Assembly (NCBI GenBank): GCA_002104905.1
Contig: MCFE01000168.1
Coordinates: 1 to 64,000 of the forward strand
Direction: 5' to 3'
Origin: Basidiobolus meristosporus CBS 931.73
Taxonomy: Eukaryota > Fungi > Basidiobolomycota
Length of the DNA stretch: 64,000 bases
Shown in pieces: positions 8,768-14,876 of this stretch. Below the pieces are notes generated by a model. That model was given only the letters and a program-made list of their open reading frames with translations. It made no database searches and was not told the DNA's origin. The position numbers and the translations under genes were made by a program. Numbering within the stretch: the stretch's first letter is position 1; the number at the start of each line of letters is the position of its first letter.

Positions 8768-9028
8768 GTGTCTACAAGGAATAGGTAGGAAGATTATTTT
8801 CACAAGAACAGTGCATGTTATATATATAGGTCGATACGATGAAGGATGAATGGTTCGTCAGATCACATATCCGCAACCCTTACATACTATTCCAGAACAC
8901 CAAAACCAGAATAGCCTGATGCTGACTACCTCTTAATAAAATATATGTTTATTTGTGAGTATCTGCAGATAAATCAATCATCACCAGTGATTTACAAAGA
9001 CTGATGTCAACATCAGTGGCAAGGGTTA

Positions 9029-9679
9029 CTAATTGTGCCAGATAAAGCTCACCCCATTTCCTGGTTTGAAGGTGGCATATTTCTTGATGTAAGGCCCTCC
9101 ATTGTAGTTGTAGTTACTTGTGTACACATTTCCATTGGCCTCAATCCTTTCAACAACAGCGACGTGTCCGGGACTGCCAGTTCCTTGAACTCCAGGCTGT
9201 ATTACTATAATACTAGGCTGCTTTGGTGTACCTGATACTGACCAACCAGGGGTGCTTTGTGCTTTGCTGGCCCAGACGCGAGCATCACCCCACCATTCAA
9301 TATGATGGCCAGTAAGCTGTGCATAGCGGGCATCAGCCCAGTCAGTACATTGACCATTTTTGAAGCGGAACTCCAGAGGCCCATTGGGTTGGGTGGTATA
9401 GCCGTTGTCGTTATCTGAGCTGTCGTTTCCATTCCCACCATAGCTATTATTTTGTTTAGAGTTTCGGTTCCCCTTTCTTGAGTTCTTGTTGTAGCTTGGT
9501 TTGTAGTTCTGGTTGGAATTCTGTGGATTGTAGCCCCAGGAATTCTTATAGGAATAGTACCGTGGCGCCAACTTGGGTTCCTCTTGTTGGATCTGACTCC
9601 CAGCGTCAGATATGCTGACCGGCAAGGCCCGAACCAATGCAACAGCGATCAAAAAGTATAGAACAGCGAATTTGTACAT
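9029..9679 (-). CDS. Secreted CHAP-domain protein (putative peptidoglycan amidase/peptidase), copy 1
   Basis: Intronless. Signal peptide, N/S/G/Q-rich linker, then CHAP motifs NGQCTDWA (Cys) and GHVAVVE (His), followed by TSNYNY. Confidence 0.9.
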   Translation of the reverse strand: MYKFAVLYFLIAVALVRALPVSISDAGSQIQQEEPKLAPRYYSYKNSWGYNPQNSNQNYKPSYNKNSRKGNRNSKQNNSYGGNGNDSSDNDNGYTTQPNGPLEFRFKNGQCTDWADARYAQLTGHHIEWWGDARVWASKAQSTPGWSVSGTPKQPSIIVIQPGVQGTGSPGHVAVVERIEANGNVYTSNYNYNGGPYIKKYATFKPGNGVSFIWHN

Positions 9680-10323
9680 GTTTCTTCCACTTTTCCAGAA
9701 AGTTGGTTTGTCCGGACCACATCTGACCAGCTTGCTTATATAAGAATGCTGGTTCTCATACCGTTGTAGCCTAGCCTTTCTAGATGGAATACAGTCTAGG
9801 GAACCTATTTTCGAGAAAAATTAATATGCAGTTACTACTCCAATTAGTAGTATTGCATATTGACAGCTGGGATGGCTGCATGGAAATCGAGTGCTTCTTA
9901 TTTTGCAGTTAATCTCTGCACCGTCCCTTGATTCTACCTAGAAATGCATCTCTCCCTCTGTTCCCTTGAAATGACATGATGTCAAGCACCCTGATAATCT
10001 TAGCTCTGGGATCTACAAGGTTGACGGTAACAGCGAATGGGTACAGCGTAGCCACACGGATGGCAGATAATAGTATTGTTTGTGAAGAATGTGCTATTCT
10101 AGATTAACAAAGCCATCGGAGAAAGAATCAAGACAACGGTTGGCAAGACTGGCGTACTTCTACTCGTTAGGTAACAGTTTCAAACCGGAAATTATCCCAG
10201 GGAAACAACAATGGGTCCACGTGATGTACTCGGAACATCCATATATGTCGTTGGTATGGAGCCTCCAACTGTTGGAGCCACCCCCTAATCCACTTTAACC
10301 TGTTAACCAGCACTAAGCCTTTG

Positions 10324-11582
10324 ATGAGGACCTTAGGGTATCTTTGGGTGCTGCTTTCGGTGCCGCTCGTGAGATCTCATCCGTATCACTCTGACACGGG
10401 TAGTTCGATTGATGTGGAGGATTTGACCGAGTACCTTAAATCCGACTTCGACGATAAGCCTAAATATGACCTCGATTCTGATAAACTTAAACATGACTTC
10501 GACTCTGATAAAGCCCTATATGACTTCAACTACAACCAACAACCACACGATCAACCAGTCGGGACGAATTGGTTCTTTCCCGAGCTGGACCCTCCCACGT
10601 ACGCTTACAACAAGGCTACTGAAACCTACCAGCGATGGGAATGTCTCAACTTCACCCAATCAGCGCTCCAGACCTGGGGAATAACCAAATTGCGATACGG
10701 TCGTGAAAACAAAGACGTTGTCCCTGACCCAAGTGACCCTACCACATCCGTATTGAGAGTGATTTACCCGAAAGGTAGTCGGAACCCTACCCATCACCCA
10801 CTTGGGGGAACTGGCTTTGATGCCAAGCCGATCTCGGTTGCTGATGGAATAGGCCAGACTGTTCGACTAAACTATCAGGTGTATTTCCCGGAGGATTTTG
10901 ATTTCGTGCATGGTAACAGGACGACTGACCTCCGCGCATACCCAGATCTTCGCTAACCCAACGTCCCCTGTCCAGGAGGCAAGCTGCCAGGGATTTATGG
11001 TGGTCACACCAGCTGCTCTGGTGGGAAATCCGCTCAAGATTGCTTTAGCGCCAGGTTTGTGGGTGTGGTTTCGCATTGGCAGGGAGATTCACTAATCCTC
11101 TCTCTAGATTCATGTGGCGTAAGGAAGGTTTGGGCGAGATTTACCTCTATGTACCAAAAACGGCCCTGCACCAACCTAGCTTCTGCAAGATTGCTCCTTT
11201 GTCGGTCTGCAACCAAAAGTATGGATTTTCCATCGGGCGTGGAAGTTTTCGGTTCAAGAAAGGGGCCTGGAATAAGGTCAGCGTCGCCGTTAGAATGAAC
11301 CAGGTCCCTTCAGAGCCTACTGGACAACTACGAGTATGGTACAATGACGAGATAGTCATTGACTATGACCAGATGGTTTGGAGGGTCAATGACACTGTAG
11401 GCTACGCAGGAATCGACTTCGAGACTTTCTTTGGGGGATCCAGTAACCGGTTTAACACCCCTATTGATACCTTCTCCCTCTTCAAAGACTTTCGGCTTGT
11501 GGTTGGCCAAGATCTGAATCAAACTCAGCTGGAGCCAAAGCCACCGACTGGCGATCAGTCTCTGGAATACGCTGAAGAATAG
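10324..11582 (+). CDS. Secreted polysaccharide lyase family 14 (PL14)-like protein, 2 introns
   Basis: Signal peptide; VLRVIYPKGS, YQVYFPEDFDFVH|GGKLPGIYGG (spliced), SARF|MWRKEGLGEIYLYVP, YGFSIGRGSFRF, FETFFGGS. These are typical PL14 motifs. Confidence 0.85.
10424..10521 (+). repeat. Degenerate ~27-bp (9-aa) acidic tandem repeat, about 3 copies, in the PL14 N-terminal region
   Basis: DFDDKPKY / DLDSDKLKH / DFDSDKALY / DF; the DNA units start gacttcgac, gacctcgat, gacttcgac. Confidence 0.6.
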
Positions 11583-11720
11583 ATTTTTGGACAATTTTGA
11601 TGTTTCTTGTATAAATATGCACATAGATCGAAAAGCTTTGACAAAACCAACATCCAATGATTCCATTTTATTCGATCTAATATTAATCGCAAGTGCTGGC
11701 GATCAACCTTGCTTTAAACA

Positions 11721-12386
11721 ATGAACTGGTATAGCCTAGCAAGAAGTAGAGCATCTTCCGTAGGCTTCACCAACCTTCCTTTTGCTGCAAGCACGCCGAG
11801 TAAATTGGTGGTCGTTCGCTGCTATACGGGGAAAGGTAGAAGGCGTTTGGTAGAGTGGACTCCTGAAGAGGATGCCAAGCTACTAGCCGGTATTCGAGAG
11901 CACGGCACCCAGTGGACAAAACTTGCGCAAGAATTTCCAAACAGAGGTCGTTTAGCTATTCGGTATCGTTATGTTTTCAATCTTAGGCCGGAGCTCAATG
12001 CACCCCCACCCGTAGCTACTCCCAGTCTCGCTATTGTCGACAAGGATGCACCTTTTCTGTGGACATCAGAAAGAGATGAGCTTCTTAAAGATCTGGTGAT
12101 TCGACATGGTCATCGCTGGCGTATGATTCAACGACTTGGGTTCCAAGGCCTAACGACTGGCAAGATACGTTATAGATACTCCTTGCTCTCGAATCCCGAC
12201 AAGGCGAAGGAGGTTTGGAATTTTGACCAAGACAAAGTACTTGTGGAAGCAATCAGGAAGCATGGATTTAATGCTTGGGACAAAGTAGCTAGTCAGCTAG
12301 CAACAAAGACTGACCAGGACTGTCGCACACGGTGGAGCGAATTGAAGAAGGAGGCGATCGCTTGGGAAAAGAAAGCACAAAAATAA
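11721..12386 (+). CDS. Intronless three-repeat Myb/SANT protein with N-terminal presequence-like extension
   Basis: Repeats WTPEEDAKLL..HGTQW..IRYRY, WTSERDELL..HGHRW..IRYRY, WNFDQDKVL..HGFNAW..CRTRW. Confidence 0.88.
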   Translation: MNWYSLARSRASSVGFTNLPFAASTPSKLVVVRCYTGKGRRRLVEWTPEEDAKLLAGIREHGTQWTKLAQEFPNRGRLAIRYRYVFNLRPELNAPPPVATPSLAIVDKDAPFLWTSERDELLKDLVIRHGHRWRMIQRLGFQGLTTGKIRYRYSLLSNPDKAKEVWNFDQDKVLVEAIRKHGFNAWDKVASQLATKTDQDCRTRWSELKKEAIAWEKKAQK

Positions 12387-12813
12387 TCTCAGTGGATCAC
12401 GCCAATTATTAGGGAGAAACCAATTGATAGAGAATATGCCGAAAAGGAGACCTTCAAGTTGCGAGGAATATATCAACGAAAAAGGAGACAATAAAGCAAT
12501 GAGGCTTGGTAGAAACAATGTCTTATAACTTCATATCCGTTTCTCGATCGTTGAACCACCACTGATGGATGCAATATTAGAGCAGCTCTGTTGATTTGGT
12601 AGTTTGGAACTATTAAACGAATCTCTTGGTTCCTGCATTGATTGGAGATAAGCTTGAATTGGGAGGGCAGTGCACCCTTGGTCGCAATAGACGATGCAAG
12701 GTTCCTTAGACTTCTGGATGTGTGTAGTGCATTCTCGTGGCAACCAGGACACTATATAGACCGCTAACCATCCACCGACGAACATCAGCTTTCTGGCAAA
12801 GTGACTACATATC

Positions 12814-13536
12814 ATGTATTTTAGTGTTATCATTGCTCTCTATCTTTCCGGCCTTGCTGTGCAAGCCTTACCGCTCAACATCAGATCCTCCGATATCGAT
12901 GCAGTGGCTGGATCAGGCATCAACCGTCGAAGCAGCTATTCGTATGTCCCAAACTACTCGCAAGGGAATAGCCAGTACCAGAATCAAAATCAAAGCCAAA
13001 ACCAGACCCAGAAGAAGCAAGGCAAACAATCTGATGGTCAAACAACTAACAGCAATAACAATGATGGATATGACACGAAGGGGACTTCCAACAGCAGCAG
13101 TAATAATGGATATGGTACGAAGGGGACTTCCAACTCCAAAGGTAAGAGCGACATTGGAAAGAGCCAAGGGTACAGCAATGCGGATGGAGGCCTAGAATTT
13201 CTATTTAAGAATGGGCAATGTACCGACTGGGCTGATGCACGCTATGCCCAACTCACCGGACACCACGTTGAGTGGAGAAGCGATGCCAAAAATTGGGCCA
13301 ACGATGCAAGATCAAATGGGTGGACTGTATCAAGCAAGCCTCAATCACCCTGTATTATAGTTTTACAACCTGGATCCCAAGGAATTGGTGCATCTGGTCA
13401 CGTGGCCGTGGTCGAGAGCATCAACTCGGATGGCAGCGTGTACACCAGCAACTACAACTTCAACGGCGGGCCCTATATCAAAGCGTACACGACCTTTAAG
13501 AGCGGCAACGGAGTTGATTATATTTGGCGCAATTAG
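12814..13536 (+). CDS. Secreted CHAP-domain protein, copy 2
   Basis: Intronless. Signal peptide, dibasic NRR site, Q/N/S/G linker. The CHAP domain is about 70% identical to copy 1 (82/117 by hand alignment). Confidence 0.9.
   Translation: MYFSVIIALYLSGLAVQALPLNIRSSDIDAVAGSGINRRSSYSYVPNYSQGNSQYQNQNQSQNQTQKKQGKQSDGQTTNSNNNDGYDTKGTSNSSSNNGYGTKGTSNSKGKSDIGKSQGYSNADGGLEFLFKNGQCTDWADARYAQLTGHHVEWRSDAKNWANDARSNGWTVSSKPQSPCIIVLQPGSQGIGASGHVAVVESINSDGSVYTSNYNFNGGPYIKAYTTFKSGNGVDYIWRN
13064..13134 (+). repeat. 42-bp (14-aa) direct repeat x2 in the CHAP2 linker
   Basis: atggatatgacacgaaggggacttccaac at 13064 and atggatatggtacgaaggggacttccaac at 13106 (GYDTKGTSN / GYGTKGTSN). Confidence 0.85.
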
Positions 13537-14540
13537 GAAATAAACCAGAGTTATCTATCATTGCAGTACCATTACAGTACCATTGCAGTTCTATTTAGAA
13601 CTGTCACTAGCATTAAGGTTAGGGGAAGGGGAAGGGCTAAGATTGGGCGCCAATATATACTATCTAGGAGGTCCAAGATTGGCCATCATTTAACACATTG
13701 TCGGTGTTACGAAAGTCTAGAGTGAGCAGCAACCAATTTGCCCAGGAGATTTGTTCACCAGCACTGTAACACAAGAACGCGAAACTGAATTAAACACCGT
13801 CTTTTTCTCTTTCAAGATTAGATGGCGCATTCCAACTGTATTCGATAAGTTTGGACATATTGTGAAAGTCTCGCCAATGGGCACTAGTCTCATCCCCCTC
13901 TCTCTCTTGAGTGAATTCTGAGTAGTTGCGTTTCAAGCAAACTTGTCGCGGTCTGGAATATTCCAGCTCAACTTGGACTCGGGTGGATTTCAACCATCAA
14001 CCTGATTTCTAAACAAACATGATGAGTTTAGTTACACGGTGAATCCACCCTTCTCAAGCATAATTAATACAGTCCCGTATTCCAACAATATCCTCAGATC
14101 GACAACTTGGGAATGACAAATTTAATAAAGTAGATGAACAATATTTCGTCGAGTGGAATGCATCGTTTGTATTCTAGGCTTGCGCATCCAAAGTTAAGAG
14201 CATTTGAGGCTCATTCAGCGTCTCACGCCGATGAAATACAAGACCGGATTCAAACACAGGACCTCGTGCTCTGGTTTCTGAGTTCTTCTCTCCTCTTCCA
14301 CAACTCGGCTTTCACACTAGGCCAAAGGAGAATATCAATAAACCGTAGGCACGCATTCAAAATTGAATTACTTGAAATCAAGTGGGACGATTTCTGAGCG
14401 TAAGCGAATAATGTTCTACAAAGTGTAGATGTGATATAGCTCTTCAATACAATGATAGACCACTATATGAAAGTACCAGAATAATGTCTCGTGGACAGAG
14501 GACTGCCTCGGCATTCAACTTAAATCACATGCAACTTCGA

Positions 14541-14609: not shown

Positions 14610-14876
14610 ATGGCAATGGCACATTTTCCAATCGAACCACACAAAAAAGCCAAAGACAGCATGCCACTAAAATCCCATCGCTCTGCCAATTACATCACTG
14701 CAGTGAACGCTCAAGCTACTCTGGTTCCTAAAGATTCCTGGAATCCATTCTCGGTGGCCGACATATTACGAAGTCCTCCATCTCGTCGCAAATCCTGTGA
14801 TTTCATAGTATCTGATTATATCTCCTTTCCCCATCATTATGAGGATGAGGAGGAATATCAGACACTAACTGCATAA
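14610..14876 (+). CDS. 88-aa hypothetical protein
   Basis: ATG ORF behind a TATA box in an otherwise gene-poor 3 kb; protein-like end RSPPSRRKS...DYISFPHHYEDEEEY. Confidence 0.5.
   Translation: MAMAHFPIEPHKKAKDSMPLKSHRSANYITAVNAQATLVPKDSWNPFSVADILRSPPSRRKSCDFIVSDYISFPHHYEDEEEYQTLTA

What the first reader, a model, noticed from the sequence alone, without database searches (positions are those of the whole stretch)
9029..13536. Two intronless bacterial-type CHAP hydrolase genes refitted for fungal secretion
Seen: both ORFs lack introns in an intron-rich neighbourhood, keep the catalytic Cys (GQC) and His (GHV), and carry a signal peptide followed by LP, a short pro-segment ending in APR or NRR (Kex2-like) and a low-complexity linker. 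Known: CHAP domains are mainly bacterial and phage peptidoglycan amidases/peptidases, and Basidiobolus genomes are reported to be rich in bacterial transfers. Inference: a horizontally acquired, duplicated (about 70% domain identity) antibacterial or bacteria-digesting enzyme.
Basis: partly seen in the sequence, partly recalled or inferred. Interest (0 to 1): 0.75.

Follow-up and report, generated by a model that had tools for sequence, protein, structure and literature searches.

The report
Bacterial-type wall-cutting enzyme genes, Basidiobolus
Two genes of the fungus Basidiobolus encode small secreted enzymes of a bacterial type (CHAP) that normally cuts bacterial cell walls; the family came once, long ago, from Ktedonobacteria-like soil bacteria into the ancestor of Basidiobolus and the insect-killing Entomophthorales, and probably serves to kill or digest bacteria.

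Summary
ORF1 (9029-9679, minus, 216 aa) and ORF2 (12814-13536, plus, 240 aa) are uninterrupted. Each has a signal peptide, a short pro-segment ending in PR or RR, a disordered N/S/G/K-rich linker and a C-terminal CHAP domain with the catalytic Cys, His and Asn. The domains are 71% identical.

- The nearest non-fungal relatives are all Ktedonobacteria (Chloroflexota) CHAP proteins, 50-62% identical.
- All fungal copies form one clade (UFBoot 100). It includes Entomophthora muscae and Conidiobolus coronatus. This points to one ancient transfer into Entomophthoromycotina, followed by expansion to at least 20 paralogues per Basidiobolus species.
- The exact donor position is unresolved (AU p = 0.67).

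The locus CHAP(-) / PL14(+) / Myb(+) / CHAP(+) is collinear with B. ranarum, so the two copies are old paralogues, not a recent duplication. The domain is under strong purifying selection (dN 0.08-0.11, dS saturated).

Peptidoglycan hydrolysis, secretion, kexin processing and expression are inferred, not shown; no RNA run was listed.

The scan found this same family earlier, on other DNA of this genome. I found no paper describing it. It is a new member of a known kind, of moderate interest.

The parts
9029..9679 (-). ORF1: intronless gene for a 216-aa secreted CHAP protein (stop codon included)
9626..9679 (-). ORF1 signal peptide (aa 1-18, predicted cleavage VRA|LP)
   Evidence: hydrophobicity profile; coordinates
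9560..9625 (-). ORF1 pro-segment (aa 19-40), ending in KLAPR before YYSY
   Evidence: alignment A3; pLDDT below 50
9383..9559 (-). ORF1 low-complexity basic linker (aa 41-99; 16 Asn, 9 Ser, 8 Tyr; pI 9.5)
9032..9382 (-). ORF1 CHAP domain (aa 100-216). Cys111 codon is 9347-9349, His172 codon is 9164-9166; Asn189 and Asn191 follow
9736..9742 (-). TATA-like box 63 nt upstream of the ORF1 ATG
   Evidence: consensus match only
8948..8953 (-). AATAAA 75 nt after the ORF1 stop codon
   Evidence: consensus match only
10324..11582 (+). Polysaccharide lyase family 14 gene with signal peptide; two short introns at about 10913-10974 and 11056-11108
11721..12386 (+). Myb-domain protein gene (three Myb repeats)
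   Evidence: conserved next to the CHAP orthologue in B. ranarum
12753..12759 (+). TATA-like box about 60 nt upstream of the ORF2 ATG
   Evidence: consensus match only
12814..13536 (+). ORF2: intronless gene for a 240-aa secreted CHAP protein (stop codon included)
12814..12867 (+). ORF2 signal peptide (aa 1-18, predicted cleavage VQA|LP)
12868..12930 (+). ORF2 pro-segment (aa 19-39), ending in INRR
12931..13185 (+). ORF2 low-complexity linker (aa 40-124; Ser/Asn/Gln/Gly/Lys-rich; pI 9.2)
13186..13533 (+). ORF2 CHAP domain (aa 125-240). Cys136 codon is 13219-13221, His196 codon is 13399-13401; Asn213 and Asn215 follow
13539..13544 (+). AATAAA directly after the ORF2 stop codon
   Evidence: consensus match only

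Best explanation
ORF1 and ORF2 are two old paralogues of a fungal family of secreted CHAP cysteine amidohydrolases. The family descends from a cell-wall hydrolase of Ktedonobacteria-like Chloroflexota. It was acquired once by an ancestor of Basidiobolus and the Entomophthorales and has multiplied in Basidiobolus. Proposed working (inferred): the N-terminal signal peptide takes the protein into the ER and is cut after VRA or VQA. A kexin-type protease removes the 21-22-residue pro-segment after PR or RR. The mature protein is basic, about 20-22 kDa, and consists of a disordered Asn/Ser/Gly/Lys-rich tether plus the CHAP domain; it is released outside the hypha. There the Cys-His-Asn triad cleaves an amide bond of bacterial peptidoglycan, either MurNAc-L-Ala or a stem or cross-bridge peptide bond. 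This lyses bacteria or digests their walls, for competition or nutrition in soil, dung and the herptile gut. Shown here: family membership, catalytic residues, fold, bacterial ancestry, chromosomal residence, and purifying selection on the domain. Inferred: secretion, processing, substrate and biological role.
For: Pfam CHAP at E 1e-15 to 1e-17. Cys, His and the Asn at His+17 and His+19 are invariant or conservatively N/D across 24-45 fungal and bacterial sequences. They align with the catalytic residues of the staphylococcal CHAP 2K3A. The AF2 domain model has pLDDT 94; the best structural match is the S. aureus CHAP of 5T1Q (TM 0.83, rmsd 1.9 A), followed by phage phi812, LysK and LysGH15 lytic CHAP domains. 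Every named non-fungal relative is Ktedonobacteria or Chloroflexota, 50-62% identical in the domain. The fungal sequences form one clade: SH-aLRT 100 with 118 rows, 99 with 240 rows, and UFBoot 100 / SH-aLRT 99 with 89 rows in the careful search. The locus is collinear with two abutting B. ranarum contigs, flanked by intron-rich housekeeping genes that are 85-98% identical in protein; this excludes contamination. Domain dN is 0.08-0.11 against saturated dS of about 1.7 or more. GC and GC3 match the neighbouring genes. Signal-peptide-like N-termini and an RR/PR/KR site are conserved at one column in 10 of 11 paralogues. TATA-like and AATAAA motifs flank both ORFs.
Against: There is no activity, secretion, processing or expression data; no RNA run was listed. 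CHAP domains also act on non-peptidoglycan amides, for example glutathionylspermidine amidase, so the substrate cannot be read from the fold. No recognisable wall-binding module (LysM, SH3b) is present; the linker is predicted disordered and does not dock on the domain. Monobasic PR is a weaker kexin site than KR or RR. The donor position within Ktedonobacteria is unresolved: the AU test does not reject a tree with the main Ktedonobacterial group held together and the fungi outside it (p = 0.67).
Confidence: 0.7

Rival explanations
1. The bacterial-derived CHAP domain is kept but has been repurposed for a substrate other than peptidoglycan. Candidates are an amide or peptide bond in the fungus's own wall or matrix, in host or insect material, or in a bacterial polymer such as poly-gamma-glutamate.
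For: The family has lasted since before the Basidiobolus-Entomophthorales split, and persists in obligate insect pathogens such as E. muscae. No wall-binding domain was found. Architectures are diverse within the genus, including a Cys-rich N-terminal module in P0016-P0018 and P0021. The CHAP superfamily includes non-peptidoglycan amidases (Gsp amidase appears among the distant structural matches).
Against: The closest sequence and structure relatives with known roles are all cell-wall hydrolases of Gram-positive bacteria and their phages. The groove-forming motifs are 55-62% identical to the bacterial donors. Fungi have no peptidoglycan, so an extracellular enzyme of this type most simply targets bacteria.
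Confidence: 0.18
2. A recent, Basidiobolus-specific transfer from gut bacteria followed by a local duplication.
For: Both genes lack introns. Basidiobolus is reported to be rich in bacterial transfers (PMC7466969).
Against: E. muscae and C. coronatus homologues sit in the same fungal clade on 260-316 kb fungal contigs. The two copies fall in different sub-clades, each with a B. ranarum counterpart in a collinear locus. Composition is fully like the neighbours. The donors are Ktedonobacteria, which are soil bacteria, not typical gut taxa.
Confidence: 0.05
3. The genes are decaying or silent relics, or assembly contamination, with no present function.
For: No RNA run could be listed. Other family members are visibly degenerate: P0304 has Phe in place of the catalytic Cys, and earlier scan notes report broken copies in other arrays.
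Against: The reading frames are intact with all catalytic residues. Domain dN is far below dS against the B. ranarum orthologues. Position is conserved between species. Fungal-type flanks and intron-bearing neighbours exclude contamination.
Confidence: 0.05

Closest known systems
Membrane-anchored CHAP proteins of Ktedonobacteria (Thermogemmatispora, Dictyobacter, Ktedonobacteraceae MAGs; e.g. P0073/P0076, loci L001-L076)
   Same: C-terminal CHAP domain of about 116 aa, 50-62% identical. Shared motifs include GQCT.WA..RY, PSIIV.QPG.QG, GHVAVVE and SNYN. The domain sits at the C-terminus in both.
   Different: The bacterial proteins are about 310-370 aa, with a Pro-rich cytoplasmic N-terminus and one transmembrane helix. 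The fungal proteins instead have a cleavable signal peptide, a pro-segment with a basic site and an Asn/Ser-rich linker. The fungal domain reads TDWAD where most bacteria read TYWAN.
Staphylococcal SsaA-like CHAP domains (PDB 2K3A, 2LRJ, 5T1Q) and phage lytic CHAP domains (phi812 hub 9EUM, LysK 4CSH, LysGH15 4OLK)
   Same: Same fold (TM 0.64-0.83) and the same Cys/His/polar-residue positions. All are extracellular wall hydrolases.
   Different: Sequence identity is only 18-36%. These enzymes are usually joined to SH3b, LysM or amidase modules, which are absent here. The bond cleaved by the fungal enzymes is unknown.
Secreted CHAP family of the oomycete Saprolegnia parasitica (7 genes; PMC3681718)
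   Same: A eukaryote with a duplicated family of secreted CHAP-domain proteins attributed to bacterial transfer.
   Different: It is a different eukaryotic lineage. That paper's table names no donor. Whether it was an independent transfer was not tested here; no oomycete appeared among the best 150 representatives I inspected.
Other peptidoglycan hydrolases transferred from bacteria to eukaryotes: GH25 lysozymes (PMC4241558), Trichomonas NlpC/P60 (PMC6299479), tick and mite Dae amidases (from my own knowledge)
   Same: The evolutionary logic is the same: a bacterial wall hydrolase is captured, given a eukaryotic secretion signal, and used against bacteria.
   Different: The enzyme family (CHAP), the donor (Ktedonobacteria) and the recipient (Entomophthoromycotina fungi) all differ. 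Activity has been shown for those systems and not for this one.

Membership tests
CHAP domain (Pfam PF05257 / MEROPS C51) | Sequence match above the curated gathering score | tested here: met
   56.9 and 61.7 bits against a cut-off of 26
CHAP domain (Pfam PF05257 / MEROPS C51) | Catalytic Cys at the start of the first helix and His in a beta-strand | tested here: met
   Cys111/His172 in ORF1 and Cys136/His196 in ORF2. Both are invariant in A1 and A2. The model has helix 12-24 and strand 72-79.
CHAP domain (Pfam PF05257 / MEROPS C51) | Third polar residue (Glu/Asp/Asn) about 17 residues after the His | tested here: met
   Asn189 in ORF1 and Asn213 in ORF2, at His+17 (N or D across the family). 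It aligns with the Glu of SEMNY in 2K3A. An invariant Asn sits at His+19.
CHAP domain (Pfam PF05257 / MEROPS C51) | Papain-like alpha+beta fold | tested here: met
   AF2 pLDDT 94 and pTM 0.89. Foldseek match to 5T1Q: E 7e-8, TM 0.83, rmsd 1.9 A.
CHAP domain (Pfam PF05257 / MEROPS C51) | Amidase or endopeptidase activity on peptidoglycan | not testable with these tools
   Needs enzyme assays.
Bacterial wall hydrolases domesticated by eukaryotes (GH25, Dae, NlpC/P60 type cases) | Gene tree places the eukaryotic genes with a bacterial donor group, away from other eukaryotes | tested here: met
   The fungal clade has support 99-100. All named nearest relatives are Ktedonobacteria. The position inside that radiation is unresolved.
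Bacterial wall hydrolases domesticated by eukaryotes (GH25, Dae, NlpC/P60 type cases) | Stable residence in the eukaryotic chromosome | tested here: met
   About 18 kb is collinear with B. ranarum on both sides, with intron-bearing neighbours and GC like the neighbours.
Bacterial wall hydrolases domesticated by eukaryotes (GH25, Dae, NlpC/P60 type cases) | Eukaryotic secretion signal in place of the bacterial anchor | tested here: inconclusive
   The N-terminus is an 18-residue hydrophobic stretch with small residues at -1 and -3, and there is no later transmembrane segment. No dedicated predictor or proteomic data were available.
Bacterial wall hydrolases domesticated by eukaryotes (GH25, Dae, NlpC/P60 type cases) | Expression and antibacterial activity | not testable with these tools
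   No RNA run was listed.
Kexin (Kex2)-processed secretory pro-proteins | Conserved KR, RR or PR site at the end of a short pro-segment | tested here: met
   RR in 5, PR in 4 and KR in 1 of 11 paralogues at one aligned column, followed by YYSY in most; the surrounding segment is otherwise poorly conserved.
Kexin (Kex2)-processed secretory pro-proteins | Actual cleavage at that site | not testable with these tools
   Needs N-terminal sequencing or mass spectrometry of the secreted protein.

The most novel reading that the evidence does not exclude
The conserved block CHAP array / PL14 lyase(s) / Myb factor / CHAP array may be a co-regulated 'bacteria-digesting' secretion locus. In this reading the lyase strips bacterial acidic exopolysaccharide (alginate or glucuronan type), the CHAP enzymes then open the wall, and the adjacent fast-evolving Myb protein acts as the local regulator. 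This would be a fungal, chromosomally fixed counterpart of a phage depolymerase-plus-lysin pair. Alternatively, the family has taken on a substrate other than peptidoglycan in Entomophthoromycotina.
Probability: 0.12. Interest if true: 0.65.

Novelty: new member of a known kind. Interest (0 to 1): 0.4.

Why it matters
Basidiobolus lives among dense bacterial communities in soil, dung and the guts of amphibians and reptiles. It is reported to shape those communities (PMC12400927), and horizontal transfer has so far been discussed mainly for its secondary metabolism (PMC7466969). A family of at least 20 secreted, selectively maintained enzymes of bacterial wall-hydrolase type per species would be a direct, testable protein-level means of fungus-bacterium antagonism or bacterivory. 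It would add an old Chloroflexota-to-fungus case to the short list of wall hydrolases captured by eukaryotes. The enzymes are small, single-domain and basic, so they are also simple candidates for lysin-type antibacterial screening. This locus adds nothing categorically new beyond what the scan already saw at other places in the genome.

Tried and rejected
- **Single-domain genome scan.** A scan of genome contigs with the single domain found nothing. The profile A1 then found 212 relatives. Its search patterns came from this subfamily, so the all-Ktedonobacteria result is partly built in. The word search and the index-free HMMER search gave the same picture.
- **Expression.** No RNA run was listed.
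- **Deep nesting in Ktedonobacteria.** The quick tree suggested it, but the AU test does not reject the alternative (p = 0.67; the constrained tree even scored better). I claim only a Ktedonobacteria-like donor.
- **Inhibitory pro-domain.** The full-length AF2 model of ORF1 gives pLDDT below 50 for residues 23-94 and shows no docking on the domain.
- **dN/dS.** dS is saturated or undefined, so omega is only bounded as much less than 1 in the domain.
- **Further copies or relics in the window.** None was found by tblastn.
- **Contamination.** Rejected by synteny and intron-bearing neighbours.
- **Literature.**
  - No held paper contains both 'CHAP' and 'Basidiobolus'.
  - The texts of Tabima 2020 and Ciach 2024 do not mention CHAP, C51 or peptidoglycan.
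  - The Ciach supplements contain no CHAP, PF05257 or C51 entry.
  - The Tabima supplements are not held, so these genes may be among that paper's 811 unnamed candidates.
- **Species of the window.** Not tested. The window's own proteins carry no source names. Earlier scan notes call the genome B. meristosporus.


Full report
**1. What is in the sequence**

One search lists two uninterrupted ORFs at exactly the stated places: 9029-9679 on the minus strand (216 aa, ORF1) and 12814-13536 on the plus strand (240 aa, ORF2).

Both match Pfam CHAP (PF05257) in their C-terminal 115-117 residues, at 56.9 and 61.7 bits against a gathering score of 26. They are 48% identical overall and 71% identical in the domain.

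Each protein is laid out as follows:
- It begins with an 18-residue hydrophobic N-terminus ending in VRA or VQA, followed by LP.
- A 21-22-residue segment follows, ending in APR (ORF1) or NRR (ORF2).
- A 59- or 85-residue Asn/Ser/Gly/Lys/Gln-rich basic stretch comes next (pI 9.2-9.5).
- The CHAP domain is last.

Between the two genes lie two others:
- A polysaccharide-lyase-14 gene, about 10324-11582 on the plus strand, with a signal peptide and two short introns.
- A three-repeat Myb gene, 11721-12386 on the plus strand.

A tblastn search finds no further CHAP copy or relic in the 64-kb window. TATA-like boxes lie about 60 nt upstream of both ATGs, and AATAAA follows both stop codons. These are consensus matches only.

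**2. The domain**

Across 24 and then 45 fungal and bacterial sequences the following are invariant: the Cys of GQCT, the His of GHVAVVE, the Glu five residues later, and the Asn at His+19. The residue at His+17 is Asn or Asp.

In ORF1 these residues are Cys111, His172, Asn189 and Asn191. In ORF2 they are Cys136, His196, Asn213 and Asn215.

A profile search of PDB sequences finds the staphylococcal SsaA-like CHAP domains 2K3A, 5T1Q and 2LRJ (E about 1e-15 to 1e-16) and the phage phi812 hub CHAP. GQCT aligns with GQCT, GHVA with GHVA, and our Asn at His+17 aligns with the Glu of 2K3A.

AlphaFold2 on the domain alignment gives pLDDT 94 and pTM 0.89. Foldseek's best match is 5T1Q (TM 0.83, rmsd 1.9 A), followed by lytic CHAP domains of staphylococcal phages, PcsB, LysK and LysGH15.

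Membership of the CHAP family is therefore met on sequence, catalytic residues and fold. Activity cannot be tested here.

**3. Relatives and origin**

The word-indexed search returns about 30 paralogues from B. ranarum and B. meristosporus. After these it returns only Ktedonobacteria/Chloroflexota CHAP proteins, at 55-62% domain identity. A second search with the domain profile, confined to short proteins, adds more Basidiobolus paralogues and again only Ktedonobacteria among named hits.

I count at least 20 distinct 90%-identity clusters in B. meristosporus and 18 in B. ranarum.

A profile scan of one genome per bacterial and archaeal species gave 212 relatives. The best 76 loci are all Ktedonobacteria: Thermogemmatispora, Dictyobacter, Tengunoibacter, Ktedonospora, Ktedonosporobacter and Ktedonobacteraceae MAGs. 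The scan's patterns were drawn from this subfamily, which favours that result.

The bacterial proteins are about 310-370 aa, with a Pro-rich N-terminus, one transmembrane helix and the CHAP domain at the C-terminus.

The index-free HMMER search of 1.84 billion representatives finds 13 proteins at E up to 1e-30. Apart from the query itself, all of these are other Basidiobolus paralogues. Bacterial-looking proteins follow.

- P0291 is Entomophthora muscae KAJ9049577.1.
- P0333 is Conidiobolus coronatus KXN74260.1.
- Three further unnamed sequences resemble these.

Ten other representatives without a clear membrane anchor are metagenomic; the one cluster that carries an organism name is Ktedonobacteraceae. 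The E. muscae and C. coronatus genes are also intronless. They lie on fungal contigs of 260 and 316 kb, the C. coronatus one beside eukaryotic genes.

**4. Trees**

| Data set | Method | Result |
|---|---|---|
| 118 rows | quick | The 37 Basidiobolus sequences form one clade (SH-aLRT 100) on a stem of 0.74 changes per column |
| 240 rows | quick | Basidiobolus plus the five Entomophthorales-like sequences form one clade (99); Basidiobolus is monophyletic (97) |
| 89 rows | careful | The fungi-versus-bacteria split has UFBoot 100 / SH-aLRT 99; the order inside the fungal clade is unresolved |

The quick tree drew the fungi deep inside Ktedonobacteria. However, an AU test does not reject a tree in which the main Ktedonobacterial group is held together with the fungi outside it (p = 0.67; the constrained tree scored better).

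My conclusion is one old transfer from a Ktedonobacteria-like donor into an ancestor of Entomophthoromycotina, with the exact donor position open. The reverse direction is unlikely. CHAP is a broadly bacterial fold, and Ktedonobacterial sequences lie on both sides of the fungal clade in every tree.

**5. The locus is old and collinear**

- The B. ranarum orthologue of ORF2 (P0002; 81% domain identity, support 98) lies directly after a Myb gene and is followed by a second CHAP gene.
- The nearest relative of ORF1 (P0013; 86% domain identity) lies in a row of three CHAP genes placed divergently next to two PL14 genes.
- tblastx shows that both B. ranarum contigs end inside PL14.
- Their outer flanks are collinear with the window over about 7 kb on the left (DUF1168, DNA primase small subunit, EF-hand, WD40, syntaxin) and about 5.5 kb on the right (a small ORF, FHA-RING, ketol-acid reductoisomerase). 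Protein identity there is typically 85-98%.

The arrangement CHAP(-) / PL14(+) / Myb(+) / CHAP(+) therefore predates the split of the two species. B. ranarum has 3 + 2 CHAP copies where the window has 1 + 1. ORF1 and ORF2 are old paralogues, not a recent duplication.

Contamination is excluded. GC and GC3 equal those of the neighbouring genes.

**6. Selection**

| Comparison | Domain dN | dS |
|---|---|---|
| ORF1 vs B. ranarum P0013 | 0.079 | 1.7 |
| ORF2 vs B. ranarum P0002 | 0.114 | beyond the method's range |

The N-terminal and linker parts have dN of 0.36-0.58. The catalytic domain is thus under strong purifying selection while the linker drifts. This fits a working enzyme on a flexible tether.

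The full-length AF2 model of ORF1 has pLDDT below 50 for residues 23-94 and a confident domain. There is no sign that the pro-segment docks on the active site.

**7. The pro-segment**

In an alignment of 11 paralogues of this architecture, the segment after the signal peptide is poorly conserved. It nevertheless ends at one column in RR (5 sequences), PR (4) or KR (1), followed in most by YYSY. Cleavage itself is not shown.

**8. Mechanism and rivals**

The most likely working is secretion, pro-segment removal, and Cys-His-Asn hydrolysis of a peptidoglycan amide bond of neighbouring bacteria. The purpose would be antagonism or feeding.

- The main rival is repurposing to a substrate other than peptidoglycan. 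I give it about 0.18 because no wall-binding module is present and the family persists in obligate insect pathogens.
- A recent, Basidiobolus-only transfer is contradicted by the trees and the synteny.
- A silent-relic reading is contradicted by the selection signal.

**9. What is known**

No held paper contains both 'CHAP' and 'Basidiobolus'. The two large studies of transfers into early-diverging fungi do not mention CHAP, C51 or peptidoglycan in their text, and the Ciach supplements do not list the family. The Tabima supplements are not held.

Comparable cases are known:
- a secreted CHAP family in Saprolegnia (PMC3681718);
- GH25 lysozymes across domains (PMC4241558);
- NlpC/P60 in Trichomonas (PMC6299479);
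- Dae amidases of ticks (from my own knowledge).

Within this scan the same family has already been reported at several other places in this genome, with the same reading. At this locus I add the cross-species synteny, the old paralogy of the two copies, the conserved basic processing site, the PL14/Myb linkage, and the caution about donor placement.

**10. Verdict**

This is a new member of a known kind. Interest 0.4.

Noticed in passing
window 10324-11582 (+); L078 399-974 and 1946-3122: A secreted polysaccharide-lyase-14 gene with two short introns (about 10913-10974 and 11056-11108) lies between the two CHAP genes. In B. ranarum two PL14 copies hold the same position, and both contigs break inside them. 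The CHAP-PL14 linkage is conserved between the species. Its substrate, and any functional tie to the CHAP genes, are unknown.
   Followed up: partly
window 11721-12386 (+); L077 425-1131: The Myb gene next to ORF2 is conserved in position in B. ranarum. It is only about 33-47% identical in tblastx blocks, far less than the housekeeping neighbours (85-98%). It may be a fast-evolving local regulator.
   Followed up: no
window 14610-14876 (+); L077 4488-4736: A small ORF (88 aa) without a Pfam match is conserved in sequence (about 57% identity) and position in B. ranarum, where an 82-aa gene is called.
   Followed up: no
P0304 / P0342 (B. meristosporus K493DRAFT_367689 and K493DRAFT_304908): A family member on other DNA has Phe in place of the catalytic Cys (GQFT) and ends early in the domain. 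It is either a decaying copy or a non-catalytic derivative.
   Followed up: no
P0016, P0017, P0018, P0021 (Basidiobolus paralogues on other DNA): A sub-clade carries a Cys-rich N-terminal module of about 60 aa (CP.GNGLYCG...C...C..GC) in place of the pro-segment. It may be a binding domain. It has no Pfam annotation in the precomputed column.
   Followed up: no
window 13040-13150 (ORF2 linker): The ORF2 linker holds a short imperfect internal repeat (GY-D/G-TKGTSNS, twice). This suggests the linker grows by slippage. The B. ranarum orthologue's linker is 56 aa longer.
   Followed up: no
P0222, P0258, P0272, P0321 (metagenomic/bacterial representatives): Some bacterial relatives join an N-terminal lysozyme- or transglycosylase-like segment to the CHAP domain and a C-terminal membrane anchor. 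Others have the CHAP domain at the N-terminus with a C-terminal anchor. The donor group therefore has several architectures.
   Followed up: no
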